Positions 38,601 to 63,702 of a stretch of 64,000 bases of DNA are shown piece after piece. The stretch spans positions 35,836,001 through 35,900,000 of the forward strand of contig OZ365109.1 of the NCBI GenBank assembly GCA_977030845.1. The letters are read 5' to 3'. The stretch is from Fimbriosthenelais zetlandica (Eukaryota). Both the position numbers and the translations under genes were made by a program. Every line of letters starts with the position of its first letter. Positions within the stretch are counted from its first letter, which is position 1. The notes under the pieces are model-generated. The model ran no database searches and was not told where the DNA came from. It saw only the letters and a list, made by a program, of their open reading frames with translations.

Positions 38601-41600
38601 AGATACATAATGATAGGATTTACACATGTGTAGGTGGTACCGGTGTCCTTGGTTTGCCTTATAATGATCACCCAATTTCGGGATGCTTTAAAGTTTGTAT
38701 GAAATTTGTATGATTATTACTNNNNNNNNNNNNNNNNNNNNNNNNNNNNNNNNNNNNNNNNNNNNNNNNNNNNNNNNNNNNNNNNNNNNNNNNNNNNNNN
38801 NNNNNNNNNNNNNNNNNNNNNNNNNNNNNNNNNNNNNNNNNNNNNNNNNNNNNNNNNNNNNNNNNNNNNNNNNNNNNNNNNNNNNNNNNNNNNNNNNNNN
38901 NNNNNNNNTACTGTCCCCATGCATGCAAGCAATTGTTCCATTCAAGCAAATTCATGTGCATGGCAAAGATCTGATCTTTTTTTCTTAATCATGTAGGCCT
39001 ACATATACTAGGTTATCTGGGGCTTTTTAATATCAAATTTTTACTTTCTTTACAGACCGTTTGATGATTGTCCTGGTAAGAAGGAGGAGCCTGAGCGCGA
39101 TCCTTGCGGCGCAGCTAGCCCTCGTGTAGGCCTTCATCTGCGTCGCTCCAAATCAGAGCTTCCATCGGAAAGCCATTATCTTCCCGGTGAAAAGTCACCT
39201 ACAGTAGATACACCCGTCCTCTCTGAGAAATACCTCACCGGAAGTGCCCACGAGCAAAACGGAAGCAGCGGTGCCCCGACTAACATGGCGCATGCGCAGG
39301 ATGGAAGGCGCGTCCGTGGCGCCACGCTTCGTAGGGGGCGCACTATTAAGCAGGACTCGAGAGAGGGGACAGCCAATGTGAGACAGTCACTGAAAATGGT
39401 TAACGGACACGGGAGGGACGCCGAACCTGACGTCAATGGCGGACTAAGTGATAAAGAGAGCCAGAAAATGAAGGCGGCTTTGGTAGGGTCGACTGTTGGA
39501 TCTCAGACTATTCTACCGCCTACAACCCCCGCACTTACAACGTGTCGCCATATGGTGGAGGCTATACGCGATAGACTGCAAAGTAAGTAATGCAATATTT
39601 ATTTTGTTAACATGTAACACTTCTGTAAACTTTCTTTTTGCCGATCAATCTTGCGATTGACCTTGGCAGCATGTAACAGTAGTATAGGACAATAGGCTTT
39701 TCAGCAGGATTATTTCATGTTGTTAGATGTTTTGGCACGTTCTAAAACGTGCTCCGCAAGTGAAAGGAAGTAAAGTCATTAAGTTTTTAAAGGAATGCAA
39801 TTATATATTATATATAAGTCTATAGTTGTTGGGTTTTATGCATGATAACCCAACGCTCTATTCAGATTAGATTCCGCCTTCAAGGCATATTTTGTTTTGC
39901 TTTCATATATGTTTTTTTTCACTTAAATTGGAACTACCATCAATGCATCCATCAATCCATCATACATTATTTCAAATCCGGACTTGTAAACTTTAATAGT
40001 TTCAGTTTGAGCTAGACTGAATAATAGAATAAATGCATACTTTCAAGATTTAAGATTTTGGAAATACTCGATCACAAATATATGGAGACCGAATAAAACG
40101 TAGATTTGCTGCGCCATTTTGGAGAATATAAATGTAAGCCTACGTTAGTGAGACGGTCATATGGCCATGGCTTGAGGCACTGTACACAGAAAGGTAGTGT
40201 TTCCTGGGCTAGGATTACTTACAGCCCTGTATAATCATCCCTTCTGTTAGAACTCATGTCACAACCTCCCCCTTTTTTTTTTTTTACAGATGGTCCGGAC
40301 AGAGAGACATTATTGGAAAAGGTGCTATACAACTGTGAGTGTATTAAAGAAGCTGTCATTAATATACTTGAGCTGCATGCTCAAGGTCAGGACTCCCACC
40401 ATGGTGTTTGTAAGTATATTCTCATATTCATATACTTTAAAAACAATAACACATAGATTGACATTTCTGCTTGACATTTGTACACATGTATATTAGGGGC
40501 AGATCTGGGTTTAGTCCCCTCTCCGCCACAGACTATGATGTCAAGTATAAATCGCTCTGCTATTTTTTCCGTCAGATTTCTGGCGAGGACTGGGCCGCAT
40601 TTTACTAAGCCCACGAGACCCAACGACCCCATCTTTGAAAATGCTTATTGTTGACAGCTAAGATTGTCAACGATGGTACAATGGAAATGCTTCTACGAGG
40701 GGTCGTTGGGTCTCGTTGGTTTAGTACAATGGGCCCCAGATCTGGGTTTAGTCCCCTCTCCGCCACAGACTGGAGTTCTTTGGAATAATGTAATTTACCT
40801 GACTAGCAAAGCTTCTGGTTCAAGGTGTACAAACAGACTATGAACTGAAGTACCATATTATAGTAGTTAATGTTACAGTACCTCTAGTAGTTAATGTTAC
40901 AGTACCATATTATAGTAGTTAATGTTACAGTACCATATTATAGTAGTTAATGTTACAGTACCATATTATAGTAGTTAATGTTACAGTACCATATTATAGT
41001 AGTTAATGTTACAGTACCTTTGTGTTCTTCCATTATGACAGTTGGGTGGTCAGACACGGATGTCATGCGTTCCTCGTCTCTACACTTGGTGGCAGCACTT
41101 GATAACCTGACGTCACATCTCACGTGTTGGATTGCCGCATTACCAGAATCAGTCCTTGCTGAGACTTTCGTGAAAAAAGATGATGAAAATTCAAGATTTT
41201 CAAGCAGGTTCGTTGACTTCGTAGGCCAAGGAAAAAGTGATGTAATTTAGGGTGGATTTAGATTAATCAACATTAAATTTCATTGGCCTACACCTAGGCC
41301 TTTTCCTTACCTCCAATCTCTCTCCTTCTCTCATTGAGTCTCATTCTTCACTATCGTATCCCTGTTCCCCATGCCGGTGTGGCCCCATTTTCTGTAGGAA
41401 TTAAATCTATGGTACTAATTAAATGGATTCTAAAATGTAAAAGAAGATTCTGTCCCCAATATTTAGTTCTCTACACTCAAACAAATGATTTCCACGTTAG
41501 TAGAAATGGCTCTGGAAATATTTCACGGATTTACGGTAATGTAGGCTGATCCAGCAGCGCTGATTATGGCAATAAACATTGACACGCCACTAACACCTTC

Positions 41601-49230: not shown

Positions 49231-49399
49231 GGGCCCCATTGTACTAAGCCAACGAGACCCAACGACCCCTCGTAGAAGCATTTCCATTGTACCATCATTG
49301 AAAATGCTTATTGTTGACAGCTAAGATTGTCAACGATGGTACAATGGAAATGTTTCTACGAGGGGTCGTTGGGTCTCGTTGGCTTAGTACAATGGGCCC
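49231..49399. mobile_element. Hairpin MITE family A, copy 3
   Basis: CTG|GGGCCCCATTG...CAATGGGCCC|CTG; matched CWG TSD. Confidence 0.9.
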
Positions 49400-49834
49400 C
49401 TGCATTAGGTCTAATTTCCCGAAGGTAAGTCTATTCTACCTAATCATGATCAGATTAATTTTGTATTCTGTTATAGGCTACACTAGGCTTTATCACTACA
49501 GTTCTCTAACATTAAATATACCGGCACGTATTTAGCATAGAATAATACAGTCAGGTATTCTCTATGAATAGCACTGTCGTTAGTAAACTGTATTCAATTA
49601 TACAGTATATTTTAGCGTTTCACTACCTCGTATAGCTATAGGCCTACCATCAACAGAAGGTCGCCAGTCATTCAAATTATAACACATTGGATGTGGGATA
49701 GGGAGGGAGAGCCATGAACATGAATCTTTTAGAACCATAGTTTCATATTCATAATTTGTATAATTCTAACCGACCCCCACCCCCTCTCCCCCGGCCCTTA
49801 ATCTTTACCTGAAAGGTTCCTTTAACTTTACCTG

Positions 49835-50002
49835 GGGCCCATTGTACTAAGCCAACGAGACCCAACGACCACTCGTAGAAGCATTTCCATTGTACCATCG
49901 TTGAAAATGCTTATTGTTGACAGCTAAGATTGTCAACGATGGTACAATGGAAATGCTTCTACGAGGGGTCGTTGGGTGTCGTTGGTTTAGTACAATGGGC
50001 CC
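49835..50002. mobile_element. Hairpin MITE family A, copy 4
   Basis: Full-length palindrome with flanks CTG/CAG; 27 bp downstream of the stop codon of the Mab-21-like gene. Confidence 0.9.
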
Positions 50003-50029
50003 CAGGTATAAACAGAAGGATCCTTATTT

Positions 50030-53000
50030 CTATATACGTGTCGGTTCCTTCTTTTTGGTTTTGTAGTCCGCGGTGATGCCGGATTGTTCTCCACCATATT
50101 TCTTCTGATTGGATTTGGTTCGCACAAGTTCATGGAGCTGTTTTCTCAATGCATCAATCTTCTTTTGATCAACCTGAGTCAGCATATTAATCCGTGGCAT
50201 TAGGAAATATGAACAGAATCTTTGTTTGAGACAATCATGCATGATGAGCAACAATGACATTAGCCAGTCCATTAATGACCTGTTTTTCATCGAGGTCCTG
50301 AATATTGTCCACAATTTAAGCGAAGTCGTCAAGGATGGCGGAAACACCGTCCAATCCTCACCTAAATCATCCGCTATCGTATCAAAAAGCTCAAAAGCCT
50401 CCTTGGCTTTCTCAAAGAACTCTCTTTTCAGACACAATTCTAGGAGTCTTCTTTCCAGAGGTTCAAAACTGACCACCCATGACTTCAGGTGGTTTTCCTG
50501 CGGCAATGGGTGGGCAAGTTCTTGTTCTCTTTCCTCTTTCTTTCTCTTGGTTCGTTTTGTTACAACCCCTTGTAAGAACCCGGGAACAGTCGGTTTCTTT
50601 TTCTCTTCCACATGTCTTCCTTCCAATTTCCAGAAGAGGGACCAGTCCCTCATTTCCTCCTCGAATTCACGCATCACTTCGAGACCGACGCGAGAGTAGG
50701 GCAGGACATGGGGCGTGGGCATGCGCACTTGAAAACCGGAAATGCGAGGCCTGCCTGCAGCTATGATGATGGGGACTATATTGAGAGTGAAGGAAGAGGT
50801 GGTGCTCTCAGCTGTGGTATCCATGTTGATGAAGCTCACCACCAAAGTAACCTCAGGGGGTTTAGACGACATTATTATACCGTATAAATCGCGACCGATG
50901 GTTATTTTGTCCAGAGACACGATAGCTTTCTGCAGAGCTGAAAGAGTGTAAGTGCAATCTAAATTGGATCATCTCGTTTCCATATTTTGAGTTTGACTAA
51001 AGTTTCACATCTCTGCTATAAATAGTCTACTATAACACATCTGAAATATAATATGGGCTGGCTTATATTTTGTTTTGGCTTTATATTTCAGAATATTATC
51101 ATTGTAATGAAAGAGCATTAATTCGTATCTAACAATATTGCAATAAAAGTAGGCCTAGTAGGCCTAATGAATTGATAATGTAATTAATAGTTTGTGACAT
51201 GAATGCCAATAGTATATTTACTAACTCTACATAGGATCAATCGCTATAGCCTAAAATAAAGGAAGTCCCAAATCTTGTATTGCTTCAAAGACCGCCGCGC
51301 CATGGGCCTATTAGTTATGGGTGGAATCAGGATGGATGAGTGTGAGTCATTTTCATCATTTTTATGTATGACTGTGTAAAAAGAAACTTACCATCTTCAA
51401 TACATTTGTGGGCTAGGGAAGGTGTGAGGTATTCATCACCAAGGAGCAGCGGGCCCCATGTTCTTTTAACTTTTAATTTTTCAGCGGGCGTCAGTGAGGG
51501 GTTTAACCTTGCCACAGCATACCCTGGAGGGACGTCCCGCGGCAGGGTGGATACAATCTACAATGACATTAGAGATTACAGATAGCAATTATAGTTTCCC
51601 CAATTAACACCAGTCATTTCATATCATTTCAACCATACCAATATTGTATGTGTATGAACATACGAAAGAAACAATGTACCACTTCAAAGCACTCACTCTT
51701 TTCTATGTTTCCTCCTCTCCACTCTCAACTGTTCTTTCTCTTTTAGACTAACTTATCTCTCCAATTCTAACCGCTAACACTCTTACTTCTATCTCATTTT
51801 CTACCTCTCAATCTTTTCCACTTTATAATGATTTAAATGATAAATTGCCTGTGTTTTTATTAAGCTGTAGCGACGAAAACCTACTACAATTGTAGAGAAC
51901 TCCAGCATAATCCAAATAAAAAAAAAATTCAGTGGCGCTTCACCTATATTTCCGCTTCCTGTTTATTACCAGTCAAAGTGTAAGCCACGGGCCTCATAGG
52001 AATGGTACCCAAGGACAATGATGTAAATAACATGGCTGATTTAAAGGACTTTCCTGTGCAATTAATGTGAGACGAACTGAATGTAAAAGGCATGTCATCC
52101 ACTGAAAAGTGGAAAGGGGACATTATACACCTTGAGGAAAGGTTTTTTTTGTGAACCGTTTGTGAACCGTATTCCCCGCTCCCAACCTAGGACAATACAC
52201 ATAAACCGGAAGTGGCCATGTTTTCATCTGAAGTTCAATTAGAGGTTTTTCGTCATACACTAGGTGGCAGGGCAATCGATTTGGGCTATTTGTAATTGCC
52301 TCTATTAAACCCACAGTTGGGAGCAACATGGATGAAACAGGTATAGTTAATTAAATATATCAGATGTTGACATGCAAGTTTCAAATCCCTAAAACTGTAG
52401 TCTACTAAGAAAATGGATCGTTTTTTCTTTAAATATTCAAGAGGAATATAGAGTATACGAAATGGCCCCTCGTTGGAGAAAACTTCAGGGTCTGCCGGCC
52501 ATTTCCTGACTTAATAACATGCGAGGATGTCAGACCAGGAGAGTAATAGGTCGATTAGTCCCCTAATGAAAATGTATGAATTTAGCTCAGTTCACTCCAA
52601 TATAACAGATGAGTCTAATTAGTGTGAAAACCTAATCAGTGTTCCGACTACTAACACGAATGCATCTGTACTTGTCTCAAATAATAATTAACAGGAGGGG
52701 GTCCAGGATTTGGGAAAATGGGGGCGGCAATTTCTGAACAGGGGTAGTGGAGGGGGGTTCAGCCTTAATAATTGTGCCCAAAAAATCTTTTAGCGACAAG
52801 TTGGTTCTTAGTTCCTGGTTTCGAACTAGGAACCACCTAGTTCCGTTTAAGAAAAATCACCGTGTATGACTACAGGGGCCCATTGTACTAAACCAACGAG
52901 ACCCAACCACCCCTCGTAGAAGCATTTCCATTGTACCATCGTTGGCAACGCTTGTTGTTGACAGCTAAGATTGCCAACGATGGTACAATGGAAATGCTTC

Positions 53001-55125
53001 TATACGAGGGGTCATTGAGTCTCCTTGTCTTAGTAAAATGCGGCCCAGACCTAAGTGGGCAAACTTACGTCAAAAGCCTCTGCTGGGATGGGCGGCCTCA
53101 AGACCAAGGTTATGTCAAAGATGTCACTGGTTCCTAATCTTTGTCTGATCTCTTCACCTTTCTGTGGGGAATCGTGCATTCCAAAGATGAAACACAGGGG
53201 GAAGCGTTTATGTATCCTGGCTGCCTCAGTGAAGAGTATCTGAAAATTGAGATCAAATAAATTGATCTACATCTACATTTATGCCAATTTAATTCAACGT
53301 TTGATATTGAAAATAAAATTAGCCTTGTATCGATTAGGCTGAGAATTGTTCATTGAATCATGAACCAGTTGTGGGATTTGAACCTGGCCATTTCGAACAT
53401 AAAATATAGTTACACAGTGAACCAACCTTTGTCACCAGTTTGGCTCTCTTCAGGTAATCATGTCCTTTTGGTAGTTGTTGCGTTGGTGAAGCATATCCCT
53501 CTGAATCTATGGGTGATATAGTACCAGTTCTGTAACCAGACATTCCAGGCACCTGGAAATCAAATAGAAGTTATGGAATAATTATCGAATTAATGTTTTT
53601 TCCTTGTCCTATCCATTTCGCCGGATGTCGGCTGAGCCTGTTTTATAGCACACGTATATATATACATGTAGTCATGTAGTATAGTGCTAAGGCAATTGGG
53701 AATGTTCTTCTGAAATTAAGTTTCTTAAGTGCTCCGAACTCGACAGGTTATAATATAGGTCCAAGGAAACCCCCACCTTTTCGAGTATGACCTTTTGTCC
53801 CTCAAATAGTAACTTTGGGGCCACAATATACTGGACAATGCCCTCCTCCCAACCCTTCTTTCCTTTTATTATTCGGAAGATTTTACCCCCATCAAACACG
53901 CCTGGATCCGCTCCAGTTGAATTTCAACCCCCACTTGGTGAAACCTTTAAGTTTTAAACCATTTTTTGGCTTAAAAATACCTATTTTTGTCTCACCTGTC
54001 CCCATGGGATGCCAGGCAGTGGCATGGAGCGTGGACTTGTCACCCGGGAGTTAAAGCCCATTGTACTGCTCTCCTGAGCTCCTCCACGAGGTACTGTATT
54101 CCAGCTGACTGTTCTCCTAACGCCCGCATTGAATGTTCTCGCCCGGTACAGGTGCTGGTCGCCTGATCTTTGGAGGTTCTCTTGAGAGTAAGACCTCATG
54201 TATCTGAAGAAAATAATAACCGTTTCAATCCAGAATTTCCATGCGTCACCTCTGGGGTTTGTTGTATACCAATAATATTTATCATAATTATTAAAGGGAT
54301 GCCAAACACTTGGGACCCGTTGTACTAAGCCAACGAGACCCAACGACCCCTCGTAGAAGCATTTCCATTGTACCATCGATGCTTATTGTTGACAGCTAAG
54401 ATTGTCAACGATGGTACAATGGAAATGCTTCTATGAGGGGTCCTTGGGTCTCGTTGGCTTAGTACAATGGGCCCCTGGTATAAAGTTATTTTTCTAGGTA
54501 GTTCTGATCTTAGATGGTTGATTTCAGTATAAATTATAGCAGGCTGATGTCTCAGTAGAGAGAAATCAATTCCTAAACATGAGAATTCGCCCCAGATTGA
54601 GGTATTCATGCCATCTTTAGCAAGTATGACGTCATGGGATGTCACATGGTGTTGGTTAGCCAATCAAGATGAGGAAGGGGTTGGACATTGCTATTGTTAT
54701 ACACACAGGGGGCGCGACTGAAGTCAGACTGGACTGTTAGATGGCGCCTGTGTAGAAAAATTACAATGCACCAACCCCTTCCTTATTCTGATTGGCTAAC
54801 CAACAACATATGATATCCTGTGACATCATACTTAGTCTTGCTAAAAAATGGCTGCCCTGTCACTGGGGTGAATTATCAAATTTAAGCTTTGATTTATCTC
54901 TACTGAGATATCAGCCAGCTATGGAATAAACTTCTTAAGTTGAGTTATAGCATACTATAGGTGTTTCCAAAAATTCAAAGTTAAACATGGGGGAAATGAT
55001 TACCTCGAAGCAAACATGGGGTCGATGCCATATCCTCTCTTGGACTCGGCCAGGAGTTGTCTGGTCCTGGGGCTGTGGTGGGAGGAACTGTAACCACTGG
55101 AGATGGAGGCGTTCATAGTAGACAT
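50030..55125 (-). CDS. Mab-21/cGAS-like (cGLR-fold) nucleotidyltransferase-superfamily protein, 509 aa, degenerate active site
   Basis: Exons 55125-55004, 54203-53996, 53552-53427, 51557-51392, 50937-50030 (TAG); phases 2,0,0,1 are consistent. Family-like motifs: PPGYAVARL, EYLTPS...ALQKAI, FTLNIVPII (cf. DLVPAI), WVVSFEPLERRLL (cf. WRLSFS..EK.LL), and C-terminal LMSLLLIMHDCLKQRFCSYFLMPRINML (cf. LL..L..CL...CPHYFIP..NL). Confidence 0.72.
52876..53045. mobile_element. Hairpin MITE family A, copy 5
   Basis: CAG|GGGCCCATTG...AATGCGGCC|CAG; matched TSD. Confidence 0.88.
54312..54474. mobile_element. Hairpin MITE family A, copy 6
   Basis: Left end mutated (GGGACCCGTTG); right end CAATGGGCCC|CTG. 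Confidence 0.85.
54528..54932. mobile_element. ~400-bp imperfect palindrome (old foldback element or MITE) in an intron of the Mab-21-like gene
   Basis: ATAGCAGGCTGATGTCTCAGTAGAGAGAAATCAA is inverted relative to TTGATTTATCTCTACTGAGATATCAGCCAGCTAT; inner arms GTTGGTTAGCCAATCA/TGATTGGCTAACCAAC; centre ~54725. Confidence 0.7.
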
Positions 55126-58943: not shown

Positions 58944-61900
58944 ATGATCAAACTGGGTATTTTCCTCGCCCTCGCGGCAGTCGGGGCGCTTGGCACAAGC
59001 CATGACGCGACCATGACGGAGGGTTCTAAAGGCGCCGACGTGGTGGAGCGCGTTTGTGACCGCATGCACTCCGCCTGCCTTTTTGATGACGACAAACTTT
59101 TCATGCGTCGTACTGCCTTCGTGGAGACGGCTGACGGAGAGGCTGGTGATACGTTTAAGCAAGGATACCACGGAGGCATTTGGAAGGTAGGCTTTTAAGT
59201 TAAATTTGTATTCAGCAAGATTTGTTAAGATTTGCGCTATTCACAAATTATTATGTTACATGGGAGGCGGTGGCGATTATGTCAGACCCCAAATGGTAAT
59301 AAATTGGTGATATTGTTACAGGGGCCCATTGTACTAAGCCAACGAGACCCAACGACCCCTCGTAGAAGCATTTCCATTGTACCATCGTTGTACAATCTTA
59401 GCTGTCAACAATAAGCATTGACAACGATGGTACAATGGAAATGCTTCTACGAGGGGTCGTTGGGTCTCGTGGGCTTGGTACAATGCGGCCCAGGAGGTGT
59501 CAGGTTGGGAGCAAAAATACGTAATATTTCTAAGGCCCCATGATGTAAATTACTCTTGCCAAACAGGATGAAATTATGGTTGAATGTACGGTGCGCTTTT
59601 CGAGCCACTTTAAGCTTTTCTTGAGATGCGCCCAGAACACGCAAGCAGCTATAGACCGCAACCGCATAACTGCCTAAGTATGTTGAAGCCATTACCAGAG
59701 TCTAAAAGCCCATATTCCTGCGCATGTTTGAAATCTCTTATTGTTCAATTGTTCCCCTGGACTCTAGAAAAATTCATCGGACTTTTAAAACTCAGGGTTA
59801 AAACAAAATTTTCGACGCCTGTTTTCAGTGATCTCGAATATGAAAGGAATAAATTACTAAATTTGGCAACTAATATTTAAAATATAAAATTTGAGTCTTT
59901 GTAAATTTCTAAGATTTTTAGAGTATCTACTTATAGTTCTTTGTACACTTATACTTGTAAGTATAAGTAATACATATAGGCCTATATTGCATACAACATC
60001 GAATTGTGTCTCGGTAAATAAGTGTGATTCTTGTAGAGCTTGCTTAAATTGTATTGACCAAATAGAAGTTGAGGTCCACATTTGTCAAACTGTATAAACA
60101 CTCTTTGACATGTGTTGATATGATGATATATACCACAGTTGTTCAGTTTGACATGAAAGTGTTATCAGGTTCCTGTCGTTGACATTTTGTGCCTGATAAA
60201 CGAGTACTTGGATCCAGGACTTGGATACCTGTCTTTTAAGCAACCAAGAAATGTTTGATGAATAGATTTCAATCTAAAATGTAGCATGTTTTTATCATGG
60301 GCGGAGCTAGAGTATTTTGGAAGGTGGACGGGCGTCTGAAATGGGGTATCCAAAATCTGACGTCTGAAATGGGGTATATCCAAAAATGTACTAATTTATT
60401 TTAGCGAAAAAAAAAATCATTCCCAAAATTGAGGAGTGACCCCCACAGATCGCTCAGTATTCCCAATCTAGGGGCCCAGGGGAGGATCTACCGTGAAAAT
60501 GTCAATTTTCAAACCCACCCACCCACTTTCTTTTTAGTTTTCTGTCTTTTTTCGAAGGCGGTAGTGGTCCTCGACTCTGGATCCGCTACTGATATATGTA
60601 AATAAATAAATAAATAAACAGAAGTTGTTCTTTTATTGACAACTAGGTGGACGAGGACATGTTTGCCACAACCCAGGAAGCTGCTGCCCAGGTGGCTCTC
60701 TCTGTCTACCTGGCCGACATCAAGACAGCGTTCGGTATCGACTGGAGCAAGACAACCTGGAATGAGTGCAGGAAACCTCTAGTGTCTGCTTTGGCCGCTA
60801 GGCTCTACATCCAGGTAGCCAATTACCTTACTATTATTTAAAGGGATATGAAACACTTACATTAAGTGGGTCTTTTGTTTTTGTCGCCTGGCATGAGAAC
60901 GGTATACTCTCTTAACATTTTGGTCCCCATATATAATAATTGTGCATCATTATAATGAAATATGCTAAGACAAATATAAAAAATTCGCTAACCACTGCCA
61001 TAAACTCTAATGTGATGGCTAAATTATATTTAAAGGAATTATCAATGGCAAATACTTTTATTTTATATAAAGGCCTGTATTTTGTGTACATCCTTGCGTC
61101 CGTTAATAATTTTAAGTAAATATTTCTTCTATTCTGTAATTAGCGGCAGATAGAAGGCACAAAGAACACCTTCCCTCGGGATATTCCTGGTCAGGCCACA
61201 TTCTGGGAGAAATACTACAGGACCGGTGGTGACAAGGATCAGTATGAGGAGGGAGCCAATAAACTTAACACACGTAAGATTTTTCTCCTATACAATGCAG
61301 TTTACTTTAGAAAAAAAGGGGGATTTACAGTTGGCAACAATGTTCATTATTATTCCCCTATCACAATTTTTGCTTAGGGCCTAAACACTGTACCGACACA
61401 TGCAGCCGTAACTGCAGTTACACACATACAAGATGGCGGGAGGCAGGTTTTGCCGATTTTTATTTTCCTCGATTGTTGCCAAACAAACCATTTTCTTAAA
61501 AATGTGAATCGACAGATCTCTTTTGTTTTGTAATATCAATGGATGGGGGTGACTAGATTGGTAAGTTTAGGTCCTATAATTGTGTAATCTACTTGAAAAG
61601 AAATCGGCTGTATGTAGGTAACTGGGTTCGTGTAAACATGAGGTACCACCCTAACTTTGTCTGCGTACCACCATAACTGTAACGGTTTTCTATCAATATA
61701 AACACGTTTCTAGACAATAACTAAATATATGAATGTGTCAGATAAGTTAATAATGTGCTTCTGGAGGGTATATGGTGATATGAGCTGGAGGTTATATCTG
61801 ATAACTTTATTACAATGATGTCAGGGGACATGGGGTGACTTTTCAGTGTGTTATAAACAGTACCACCATAACTGGCTTTTTCTTTGGAAGTTTCGAAGCG

Positions 61901-63702
61901 AGTGTTGTGGGCCTTTCCAATAAAATCATAATTTTGTGGAATTTTATTTAGAGACTTGGGCAAAATAAAATATTAGCAGCACATTCATTTCAGTAGGATT
62001 AATTTAATGGATCGAGTGAAAAATATCTGGCCTACTCTAAGTAGGCCTACCTGTAAAAATAATCTTCCCAGCTCAGCGCCTTTTAATAGGCCTAATTCTA
62101 GATATTTTTGCAGCAGAATCATTATTTGCAGAAGAGCCAGCAGTAGTGTTCCAGTGCAGTGAAGAGGTCATGAGAAGACGAAAAGTTGGAAACTGTAGAT
62201 ACCATAAAGTGTGGCTACTTTGGCTCATCAAACAGACATTTTACCTTTTTTTATAATATCCAAGACTATCCCTACTGAGGATTTATCTAGGCCTATATTT
62301 GTGATGTATCTCAAGGGTGACAACCTAAATTTAGGCCCAATTTACGTTTAAAATTAACGCTTTTTTTCGTCGTTTCCTTTAAATTTTAACAAGTTTATAT
62401 TTATGTCATATTTTTTGTATCCAGCAAATGTTATAGACTCCTGACCAGATTGCCCTGAAGAAACTATTTTCCCTTATACAGCACCCTTTTATATTTTTGT
62501 ATATTTTTGAAGTTTTTGACTTCGAAAATGCGTTTAATTATTATAAATTTCTCTTACATAGATTAGATAGATAATCTGAGCCAAAGTAGCCCCATTTTTC
62601 AATCAAAATTGGGGCCAAATTATCACTTTTCATGCTTGTTTCTGACTGTCACCTCACGATAGCTAGGTATCTTGGACATTATGTAATGTTTTATCATTTT
62701 GTTACAAAATTTCAACACTCTTTTTCAACAACAAATTGTGAAAAAACAATTCCAATATGGCCGGCGCATTTCTTCACCCAAAATAGAATACAAATACATT
62801 TGTATAATTAAGTATAAACCTTACAGTTGGGGAGTCTCCTTCTATTGAGGCATAATCACAGACAAATGAGTTACAGTGGTACCTATTTGGCTTCAGTTAT
62901 GGTTGTATCTTTGAAATCTAATGGTGCAGTTAGGGTGGTATCAGCAGTTCAGTTATGGTGGTACCTCACGATATTTATTTTCCGTATTACAAGAAATTGA
63001 CAACCTTACAAGTGAAGTTGAACCTACCCATCCCTTGGTACGACAAAAAAGAAGAGATCTGTCGATTCACATTTTTAAGAAAATGATTTGTTAGGCAACA
63101 ATCGTGGAAAATAAAAATCGGCAAAACTTGCCTCCCGCCATCTTGTATGTGTGTAACTGCAGTTACGGCTGCATGTGTCGGTACAGTGCTAAAGGGAAAA
63201 TGTGCCATGCTGCATGCAGCTGTCTATACAATAAATTAGAAAAAGCCCTATTAAAATATACCTATAATTTGATCTATATAAATTGTGATTTTGTTTGGTT
63301 ATCGTGAAGAATTGTAATACTTTGCAAGTAAGCCTCAAATGGTCATTGGAGTTGTATAATTTTGCTGCCAATGGTAGATTAATGGGCTTACGTACAGTGT
63401 AAACCGGATGTGACGATATCTTTTAGTTTTAGACTGTGTTGATTAGGAGAACCAAAATTTGTGTCTGTTTTTGTGGGAATTAACGATTGACGTTTTCTTT
63501 CCTTAATAGAGTGTAAGCAGATCTACGGTGCTGACCTGCTGTTTTTGTTGGATGGCTCTGGCTCCGTCAAAAAAACACACTTCAACACGATGAAGAAGTT
63601 TGTTGTGGATGTCATTGACACGTTTGACATTGCTGCCGATGCAACCCGAGTTGCTGTAGGCACCTTCGCTGCCAGTTACCGTACAGACTTCTACCTCAAC
63701 AC
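58944..63702 (+). CDS. Secreted protein: signal peptide, lysozyme/lytic-transglycosylase-like domain, VWA domain (continues past the window)
   Basis: Exons 58944-59186, 60647-60814, 61144-61273, 63510-63702 (phases 0,0,1). Signal peptide MIKLGIFLALAAVGALG; then LFMRRTAFVETADG...GYHGGIWKVD...FGIDW...RKPLVSALAARLY...QATFWEKYY; VWA start ADLLFLLDGSGSV (MIDAS DxSxS), TRVAVGTF. Confidence 0.88.
59322..59490. mobile_element. Hairpin MITE family A, copy 7
   Basis: CAG|GGGCCCATTG...CAATGCGGCC|CAG; matched TSD. Confidence 0.9.
60476..60591. mobile_element. CAGGGG(C/A)GGATC...GGATCCGC(C/T)ACTG-type MITE, possibly hAT-like
   Basis: CAGGGGAGGATCT...GGATCCGCTACTG; partial relatives at ~52692 and ~56060. 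Confidence 0.55.
61386..63188. mobile_element. 1803-bp non-autonomous DNA transposon with Transib/RAG-like end structure
   Basis: CTAAA|CACTGTACC...GGTACAGTG|CTAAA: 5-bp TSD and CAC termini. TIR is perfect for 60 bp and runs 137 bp with 4 mismatches; subterminal GTACCACC(A/C)TAACT repeats at both ends; no transposase ORF. Confidence 0.85.

What the first reader, a model, noticed from the sequence alone, without database searches (positions are those of the whole stretch)
61381..63193. Intact-ended Transib/RAG-like non-autonomous transposon (CAC termini, 5-bp TSD, 137-bp TIRs) in an intron of the lysozyme-like/VWA gene
Seen: the 1803-bp element is bounded by identical CTAAA pentamers, and no other duplication length (2, 3 or 4 bp) fits. 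It starts CACTGTA, a 5/7 match to both the RSS heptamer CACAGTG and the ProtoRAG end CACTATG. The TIRs are perfect for 60 bp, and the element makes up 1803 of the 2236 bp of intron 3. Known: CAC ends with 5-bp TSDs define the Transib/RAG transposase lineage, whereas CACTA/EnSpm and Chapaev elements give 2-4-bp TSDs. Inference: this is a young non-autonomous element mobilised in trans, so an active or recently active Transib or RAG1L(-RAG2L) transposase may exist in this genome. Against this: the TSD is AT-rich, the TIRs are long, and I see no RSS-like nonamer at 12- or 23-bp spacing.
Basis: partly seen in the sequence, partly recalled or inferred. Interest (0 to 1): 0.72.

Follow-up and report, generated by a model that had tools for sequence, protein, structure and literature searches.

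The report
Young CAC-ended non-autonomous DNA transposon
A 1.8-kb cut-and-paste jumping gene with no gene of its own sits in an intron of an animal VWA-domain gene; its ends and 5-base target duplication fit the Transib family best, but it is an ordinary kind of element and no link to RAG-like transposons could be shown.

Summary
An 1803-bp element (61386-63188) has 162-nt inverted ends, 94% alike and perfect for the outer 60 nt. It starts CACTGTA and is flanked by identical CTAAA pentamers. It has no ORF over 80 aa and no Pfam or Rfam match. It lies in a 2236-bp intron just upstream of the first VWA exon.

It is a real, probably recent, non-autonomous TIR transposon. CAC ends plus a 5-bp duplication fit Transib best (about 0.55), but that rests on one copy. 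There is no Transib-style A-rich nonamer, and the end fails the protostome RAG-like TIR consensus beyond CACT. hAT5 elements also make 5-bp duplications. Earlier notes on this genome report autonomous CACTA elements but no Transib or RAG1-like transposase.

One new detail: each end carries, only there in the 64-kb window, the exact 9-mer of the ProtoRAG TR5/YY1 site. It is inverted and 36 nt from the heptamer, not 27/31.

No other copy, parent element or empty site could be reached. The scan has already noted six similar CAC-ended, 5-bp-duplication elements on other DNA of this genome, and the three that were followed up got the same verdict.

The parts
61381..61385 (.). Left target-site duplication, CTAAA
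   Evidence: Identical to 63189-63193. The base before it (C at 61380) differs from the element's last base (G at 63188), so the repeat is exactly 5 nt.
61386..63188 (.). Whole non-autonomous element, 1803 bp, 36% GC
   Evidence: No ORF over 80 aa, no Pfam hit for 10 internal ORFs, no Rfam hit, and no second copy in the window.
61386..61547 (+). Left terminal inverted repeat (162 nt). The outer 60 nt (61386-61445) are perfect. Starts CACTGTA.
   Evidence: Mismatches to the other arm are at positions 61, 84, 96, 103, 138, 140, 147, 148, 151 and 155.
63027..63188 (-). Right terminal inverted repeat (162 nt). The outer 60 nt (63129-63188) are perfect.
63189..63193 (.). Right target-site duplication, CTAAA
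61429..61439 (-). YY1-type site CCGCCATCTTG, which contains the ProtoRAG TR5 9-mer GCCATCTTG. It occupies TIR positions 44-54 and reads towards the end.
   Evidence: The 9-mer occurs only in the two arms of this element in 64 kb (0.44 expected per window). Motif identity is from PMC8289069 and PMC7481187.
63135..63145 (+). The same YY1/TR5-type site in the right arm
61408..61421 (.). 14-nt palindrome GTAACTGCAGTTAC inside the left TIR (positions 23-36). Its twin is at 63153-63166.
   Evidence: family D7. A possible dimer-binding site; this is inference only.
61643..61874 (+). Left subterminal block with three copies of the 15-nt motif GTACCACCATAACTG (61643-61657, 61665-61679, 61860-61874)
   Evidence: All 6 matches with at most 2 mismatches in the window lie inside the element (0.17 expected).
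62869..62964 (-). Right subterminal block with the same motif in inverted orientation (62894-62908, 62927-62941, 62950-62964, plus a weaker copy at 62869-62884)
   Evidence: Beyond position 162 the two arms share only these motif copies.
61274..63509 (+). Host intron (2236 bp, GT...AG, phase 1) that contains the element
   Evidence: Read. The upstream exon 61144-61273 is open in frame. The downstream exon from 63510 starts the VWA domain.

Best explanation
This is a non-autonomous class II (cut-and-paste) transposon that inserted fairly recently into an intron of a VWA-domain gene.

Shown directly: it has long, almost perfect terminal inverted repeats that begin with CAC. It has arrays of a 15-nt subterminal motif in mirror orientation at both ends. 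It has no coding capacity. It is flanked by an exact 5-bp target-site duplication.

Inferred: a DDE transposase encoded elsewhere in the genome binds the ends and probably the subterminal motifs. It cuts exactly at the CAC and joins the ends to target DNA with a 5-nt stagger, whose repair gives the CTAAA duplication.

CAC ends plus a 5-bp stagger best fit the Transib superfamily, within the CACTA-Mirage-Chapaev-Transib clade. That would imply nick-and-hairpin cleavage as in Transib and RAG.

The YY1-type site inside each perfect outer TIR may recruit a host factor or act as an end-borne promoter in the parent element, as shown for ProtoRAG. That is a parallel, not a demonstrated function here.
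For: - TIR: 162 nt, 94% alike, perfect for the outer 60 nt. The 30-nt end is unique to the two termini.
- TSD: exactly 5 nt and the only length compatible with fully complementary ends. Chance is about 0.0013.
- Subterminal motif: found only inside the element, mirrored at both ends, 6 copies against 0.17 expected.
- No coding capacity: no ORF over 80 aa, no Pfam or Rfam match.
- Literature: Transib and RAGL elements have invariant CAC ends and 5-bp TSDs (PMC1131882, PMC7204232). The CMCT clade shares CA..TG ends and 2-5 bp TSDs (PMC12730594).
- TIR mismatches: all 10 lie beyond position 60 (P about 0.01 if they were spread uniformly). This suggests the outer 60 nt are the functionally constrained part.
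- Same genome: earlier notes report six other CAC-ended, 5-bp-TSD elements. These are leads, not tested here.
Against: - Only one copy is available, so the TSD length rests on n=1.
- There is no A-rich nonamer 12 or 23 nt after the heptamer. TIR positions 20-28 and 30-39 are GCCGTAACT and CAGTTACACA, against the Transib consensus AAAAAAATC (PMC1131882).
- The TSD is 20% GC, whereas Transib, RAG and ProtoRAG favour GC-rich targets (PMC1131882, PMC8289069).
- TIRs of 162 nt with subterminal repeat arrays are more typical of CACTA, hAT or P elements than of described Transibs.
- The scan's notes list autonomous CACTA/EnSpm, MULE, ISL2EU, Zisupton, pogo and Tc1 elements in this genome but no Transib or RAG1-like transposase. 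Those notes cover only part of the genome.
Confidence: 0.55

Rival explanations
1. It is a non-autonomous member of another branch of the CACTA/Mirage/Chapaev (CMC) group, mobilised by one of the CMC transposases already noted in this genome. Either that lineage makes 5-bp duplications or this was an atypical insertion.
For: - The ends begin CACTG, close to CACTA.
- Arrays of subterminal repeats are the classic CACTA architecture.
- Earlier notes report many CACTA/EnSpm elements in this genome, including complete two-gene copies (not tested here).
- The CMCT clade as a whole spans 2-5 bp TSDs (PMC12730594).
Against: With the ends fixed by the TIR, duplications of 2, 3 and 4 nt do not match: AAA vs CTA, TAAA vs CTAA. 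Described CACTA elements make 3-bp TSDs and Chapaev 4-bp. CACTA TIRs are usually short.
Confidence: 0.12
2. It is a non-autonomous hAT element of the hAT5 group, which makes 5-bp instead of 8-bp duplications.
For: - hAT5 is a described animal hAT group with 5-bp TSDs (PMC12730594, citing Repbase Reports 2007).
- hAT elements use subterminal repeats.
- hAT elements tend to insert in AT-rich DNA (PMC1131882), which fits CTAAA.
Against: In 22 hAT families the third terminal nucleotide is always G (PMC1131882, Figure S7 legend); here it is C. hAT TIRs are typically much shorter than 162 nt. No hAT5 end sequences could be consulted.
Confidence: 0.1
3. It is specifically a derivative of a RAG-like (RAG1L-RAG2L) transposon rather than of a plain Transib.
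For: - It has CAC ends and a 5-bp TSD.
- The terminal heptamer shares CACT with ProtoRAG and protostome RAGL ends.
- Each perfect outer TIR carries the exact ProtoRAG TR5/YY1 9-mer GCCATCTTG, found nowhere else in the window (PMC8289069, PMC7481187).
- Oyster and nemertean RAGL TIRs printed in the supplement of PMC7204232 also contain GCCATNTT 25-36 nt after the heptamer.
Against: - The end fails the protostome RAGL consensus after CACT. In particular the conserved AAA at positions 8-10 is CCG here.
- The TR5-like motif is inverted relative to the end and sits 36 nt from the heptamer rather than 27/31.
- YY1 sites are common in promoters and other transposons.
- No RAG1L or RAG2L gene was found. 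RAGL elements are reported from molluscs, nemerteans, cnidarians and deuterostomes, not from the group this genome is thought to belong to.
Confidence: 0.07
4. It is a PIF/Harbinger-type (Tourist-like) element with the usual 3-bp TAA duplication. Its true ends would lie 1 nt further out (61385-63189).
For: Shifting both ends outward by 1 nt gives a TAA duplication with 9/10 terminal complementarity. TWA is the PIF/Harbinger hallmark, and such MITEs are common in invertebrates.
Against: This reading needs a non-complementary terminal base pair (A...C). It also needs two extra coincidental flank identities (about 0.07). PIF/Harbinger ends do not normally start with CAC one base in.
Confidence: 0.05

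Closest known systems
Non-autonomous Transib elements (Transib-N families of insects, sea urchin, hydra; Kapitonov & Jurka 2005, PMC1131882)
   Same: CAC termini, a heptamer-like end (5/7 to CACAGTG and 4/7 to CACAATG), an exact 5-bp target-site duplication, no coding capacity, and mobilisation in trans.
   Different: No A-rich nonamer after a 12- or 23-nt spacer. The TIRs are 162 nt rather than about 40. There are arrays of a 15-nt subterminal motif. The TSD is AT-rich. The transposase partner is unknown.
ProtoRAG / RAG-like (RAGL) transposon ends (PMC8289069, PMC7481187, PMC7204232)
   Same: CACT at the tip, a 5-bp TSD, and a YY1-type element identical to the 9-bp TR5 (GCCATCTTG) within the terminal 60 nt.
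   Different: TR5 is inverted and 36 nt from the heptamer, not 27/31. The conserved A-rich block at positions 8-10 is missing. The two ends are symmetric rather than asymmetric 5'/3' TIRs. There are no RAG1L/RAG2L genes.
CACTA/EnSpm elements (abundant in this genome according to earlier notes)
   Same: A CACTR tip, mirrored subterminal repeat arrays, and frequent non-autonomous derivatives in introns.
   Different: A 3-bp TSD is excluded for this copy, and the TIR is far longer than usual.
hAT5 group of hAT transposons
   Same: A 5-bp target-site duplication, subterminal repeats and an AT-rich target.
   Different: The third terminal base is C, not the G that is invariant in hAT ends, and the TIR is very long.

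Membership tests
Transib superfamily | Termini begin 5'-CAC and end GTG-3' | tested here: met
   CACTGTA at 61386 and TACAGTG ending at 63188.
Transib superfamily | 5-bp target-site duplication | tested here: met
   CTAAA on both sides. It is the only length compatible with fully complementary ends. One copy only.
Transib superfamily | Bipartite RSS-like end: heptamer, spacer of about 23 (or 12) nt, A-rich nonamer (consensus AAAAAAATC) | tested here: not met
   TIR positions 20-28 and 30-39 read GCCGTAACT and CAGTTACACA, against the consensus in PMC1131882.
Transib superfamily | [quoted passage not shown] | tested here: inconclusive
   The TSD is 20% GC, the 15-bp site 53%, the 35-bp site 40%, and the window 39%. 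One site cannot show a preference.
Transib superfamily | Autonomous partner encoding a Transib/RAG1-core DDE transposase with the same ends | not testable with these tools
   The genome is not in any searchable collection. The scan's notes record no such gene.
RAG-like (RAGL/ProtoRAG) transposons | TIR tip matching CACTWMCAAACKTYKBB with conserved AAA at positions 8-10 | tested here: not met
   CACTGTACCGACACATG matches only CACT plus three degenerate positions (7/17). Positions 8-10 are CCG.
RAG-like (RAGL/ProtoRAG) transposons | Second conserved block (TR5, GCCATCTTG) 27/31 nt after the heptamer, reading inward | tested here: inconclusive
   The exact 9-mer is present in both arms and nowhere else in the window. 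It lies on the opposite strand and 36 nt after the heptamer.
RAG-like (RAGL/ProtoRAG) transposons | Convergent RAG1L-RAG2L gene pair in the parent element | not testable with these tools
   No access to the rest of the genome. None was noted by the scan.
CACTA/EnSpm | 3-bp target-site duplication | tested here: not met
   The 3 nt flanking the ends are AAA on the left and CTA on the right.
CACTA/EnSpm | CACTA/CACTG tip with subterminal repeat arrays | tested here: met
   CACTG tip, with the 15-nt motif three times on the left and three to four times inverted on the right.
hAT (hAT5 group) | hAT-type terminus with G as the third nucleotide | tested here: not met
   The third nucleotide is C. 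The rule comes from PMC1131882, Figure S7 legend.
PIF/Harbinger | TWA 3-bp duplication directly flanking complementary termini | tested here: not met
   A TAA reading is possible only with the ends shifted 1 nt outward and a mismatched terminal base pair.

The most novel reading that the evidence does not exclude
The element is a deletion derivative of a still-undiscovered RAG-like (RAG1L-RAG2L) transposon in a phylum where none has been reported. Its ends would keep the host-factor (YY1/TR5) site that ProtoRAG uses for end recognition, but in a rearranged, symmetric layout. Together with the six similar elements noted elsewhere in this genome, that would point to a recently active RAG-lineage transposase in a new branch of protostomes.
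Probability: 0.07. Interest if true: 0.7.

Novelty: new member of a known kind. Interest (0 to 1): 0.25.

Why it matters
As it stands, this is one more young non-autonomous DNA transposon in an intron. It is useful for annotation, and it shows that some transposase making 5-bp staggered cuts at CAC ends has been active recently in this genome.

It would matter more if the parent proved to be a Transib or, especially, a RAG-like transposon. That would extend the known range of the lineage that gave rise to V(D)J recombination.

The end-borne YY1/TR5-type site would also become a second, independent example of host YY1 being wired into transposon-end recognition.

The 162-nt arms also mean that the host pre-mRNA can form a long double-stranded hairpin. 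This is a possible substrate for RNA editing or small-RNA pathways; I did not test it.

Tried and rejected
**Searches for other copies, all blank**
- 30-nt end in the window, with up to 3 mismatches.
- blastn of the whole element against the window.
- Word search of the protein collection with the 66-aa frame that is open across the TIR.
- Exact look-up of 10 ATG-started ORFs from the element, its flanks and elsewhere in the window. None is in the collection, so this genome's ORFs are not indexed.
- Exact 22-nt end against metagenome contigs.
- The scan's own findings, searched by sequence.
- The end in five loci fetched from relatives.

**Reads and empty-site alleles**

**Orthologous empty site**
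- The nearest relatives reachable have a TRIM-NHL gene 85%, 72% and 53% identical in protein: Logan ERR14368248/ERR14368245, ENA ERZ25767047 and NCBI GCA_029980185.1.
- They are only about 76% identical in coding DNA at best.
- Their non-coding DNA does not align outside short patches, so intron comparison is impossible.

**Coding remnants and RNA genes**
Ten internal ORFs had no Pfam match (one hit at E 0.11 is noise). There was no Rfam match.

**Other checks**
- Organism name: the cluster look-up gave no names.
- Chance explanation for the TSD and the inverted repeat: rejected.
- A CA..TG-ended TIR scan of the whole window found no second CAC-ended element with a 5-bp duplication.
- The host gene was scanned exon by exon by reference.
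- I left the third word search and the large representative search unused. The genome is absent from those collections and no transposase seed sequence was available by reference.
Full report
**1. The observation**

- The sequence shows an element from 61386 to 63188. Its two ends are inverted repeats of 162 nt at 94% complementarity (arms 61386-61547 and 63027-63188).
- In a direct alignment the first 60 nt from each tip are identical. The ten mismatches all lie at positions 61-155.
- The element starts CACTGTA and ends TACAGTG.
- Immediately outside lie CTAAA (61381-61385) and CTAAA (63189-63193).
- I moved each end by -3 to +3 nt and tested direct repeats of 2-12 nt. Only the 5-nt repeat at the stated ends keeps the termini fully complementary (10/10).
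- The single other symmetric solution is TAA with both ends one base further out. It costs a mismatched terminal base pair.
- A 5/5 identity at a fixed junction has probability about 0.0013 from base composition and 0.0014 empirically.
- The 30-nt end occurs nowhere else in the window, even with three mismatches.
The donor is at 61274 and the acceptor ends at 63509, giving 2236 bp. The next exon begins exactly at position 1 of the VWA profile (PF00092, E 3.8e-15).

**2. Anatomy**

- The longest ORF touching the element is 80 aa.
- Ten internal ORFs have no Pfam match. There is no Rfam family on either strand. The element is therefore non-autonomous.
- Beyond position 162 the arms no longer align. 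Both still carry a 15-nt motif, GTACCACCATAACTG. There are three copies on the left on the + strand. There are three on the right on the - strand, plus a weaker fourth.
- All six window matches to this motif lie inside the element, against 0.17 expected. Mirrored subterminal repeats of this kind are the usual extra binding sites for a transposase.
- Each TIR also holds a 14-nt palindrome at positions 23-36.
- All ten arm-to-arm differences avoid the outer 60 nt (P about 0.01 under uniformity). They were therefore probably inherited from an imperfect parent, and arm divergence cannot date the insertion.
- What does speak for a recent insertion is about 130 nt of TSD plus outer TIR without a single change.

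**3. Family assignment**

- Kapitonov and Jurka (PMC1131882) define Transib ends by four features: an invariant CAC, a CACAATG-like heptamer, an A-rich nonamer after about 23 nt, and 5-bp duplications in GC-rich targets.
- Martin et al. (PMC7204232) give the protostome RAG-like end as CACTWMCAAACKTYKBB. It has a strongly conserved AAA at positions 8-10 and invariably 5-bp duplications.
- This element meets the CAC and 5-bp criteria.
- It has no A-rich block at either spacing.
- It matches the RAGL consensus only at CACT and three degenerate positions. Positions 8-10 are CCG.
- Its duplicated pentamer is AT-rich.
The animal hAT5 group also makes 5-bp duplications (PMC12730594). However, hAT ends carry G, not C, as their third base (PMC1131882, Figure S7 legend).
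- The same paper describes the CACTA-Mirage-Chapaev-Transib clade as sharing CA..TG ends with 2-5 bp duplications. The safest statement is therefore "CMCT-clade element with the Transib-type 5-bp stagger".

**4. Genome context from earlier notes**

These are leads that I did not test.
- Six other CAC-ended, 5-bp-duplication elements have been noted on other DNA of this genome. Three were followed up, with the same verdict as mine.
- The notes list autonomous CACTA/EnSpm, MULE, ISL2EU, Zisupton-type, pogo and Tc1-type elements. They list no Transib or RAG1-like transposase.
- This raises the weight of a CMC rival somewhat. Even so, 3- and 4-nt duplications are excluded for this copy.

**5. A new detail**

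- ProtoRAG ends have a second conserved block, TR5 = GCCATCTTG, located 27 or 31 nt after the heptamer (PMC8289069).
- TR5 is a YY1 site. Lancelet YY1 binds it, represses RAGL transcription and helps the transposase recognise the correct ends (PMC7481187).
- The perfect outer part of each TIR here contains CCGCCATCTTG at TIR positions 44-54 (61429-61439 and 63135-63145).
- The 9-mer occurs only there in 64 kb. With 0.44 expected per window, that is about 0.001 per arm. Allowing for the handful of motifs I compared, the chance is still only a few in a thousand.
- In the supplement of PMC7204232, an oyster RAGL end shows GCCATGTTT 25 nt after the heptamer. A nemertean end shows GCCATATT at positions 44-51. 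I looked only for this pattern, so that is a biased sample.
- Here the site is on the opposite strand relative to the tip and 36 nt from the heptamer.
- Read inward it is ACAAGATGGCGG, a Kozak-like ATG in the orientation typical of YY1 sites just downstream of transcription starts. An end-borne promoter or first exon of the parent element is therefore a plausible inference, but an untested one.
- YY1 sites are common in promoters and other transposons. I treat this as a functional parallel, and it raises the RAGL-specific reading only slightly.

**6. What could not be done**

- This genome's ORFs are not in the protein collection. The end is absent from metagenome contigs and from the scan's sequence index.
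- The nearest reachable relatives share a TRIM-NHL gene at 85%, 72% and 53% protein identity. Their non-coding DNA does not align and they lack the end.
- The organism could not be named.
- The host gene was examined exon by exon by reference.

**7. Verdict**

- This is a real, probably recent, non-autonomous TIR transposon.
- The mechanism is ordinary cut-and-paste with a 5-nt staggered target cut.
- My estimates for the family are below. The remaining 0.11 is for something else.

| Reading | Estimate |
|---|---|
| Transib-type | 0.55 |
| Other CMC lineage | 0.12 |
| hAT5 | 0.10 |
| RAGL specifically | 0.07 |
| PIF/Harbinger | 0.05 |

- It is a new member of a known kind, and the scan has met the same kind repeatedly in this genome.
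- Interest is low. There is a small upside if a whole-genome search finds a RAG-lineage parent.

Noticed in passing
window 1991-2161, 40592-40739, 49231-49400, 49830-50007, 52873-53046, 54309-54479, 59319-59491: A palindromic MITE-like repeat of about 170 bp, with ends GGGGCCCCATTGTACTAAGCC..., occurs seven times in 64 kb at 78-97% identity. One copy lies in an upstream intron of the same host gene. Family and TSD were not determined.
   Followed up: partly
window 2715-2731 and 3411-3427: A perfect 17-nt inverted repeat starting CACAG lies 679 nt apart with no flanking duplication. The left arm appears to lie in coding-looking sequence. It could be an old CAC-ended element or exon-intron complementarity.
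   Followed up: partly
supplement of PMC7204232 (oyster and nemertean RAGL TIRs), compared with window 61429-61439: Published protostome RAGL ends contain GCCATNTT (the YY1 core, like ProtoRAG TR5) 25-36 nt after the heptamer. The main text of that paper discusses only the first 13-17 nt. A systematic check across RAGL and Transib ends might show a conserved host-factor site.
   Followed up: partly
window 61386-61547 with 63027-63188: The element is intronic, so the host pre-mRNA can fold its two arms into a double-stranded stem of about 160 bp with a 1.5-kb loop. This is a possible trigger for RNA editing or small RNAs. Not tested.
   Followed up: no
window 8506-10290 (- strand): A 594-codon open frame encodes a B-box/coiled-coil/NHL (TRIM-NHL) protein. 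Its closest database relatives are unnamed sequences at 85% and 72% identity. All named hits are cnidarian TRIM71-like proteins at about 25%.
   Followed up: partly
window 38722-38908: A single run of 187 N (assembly gap or mask), left untouched.
   Followed up: no
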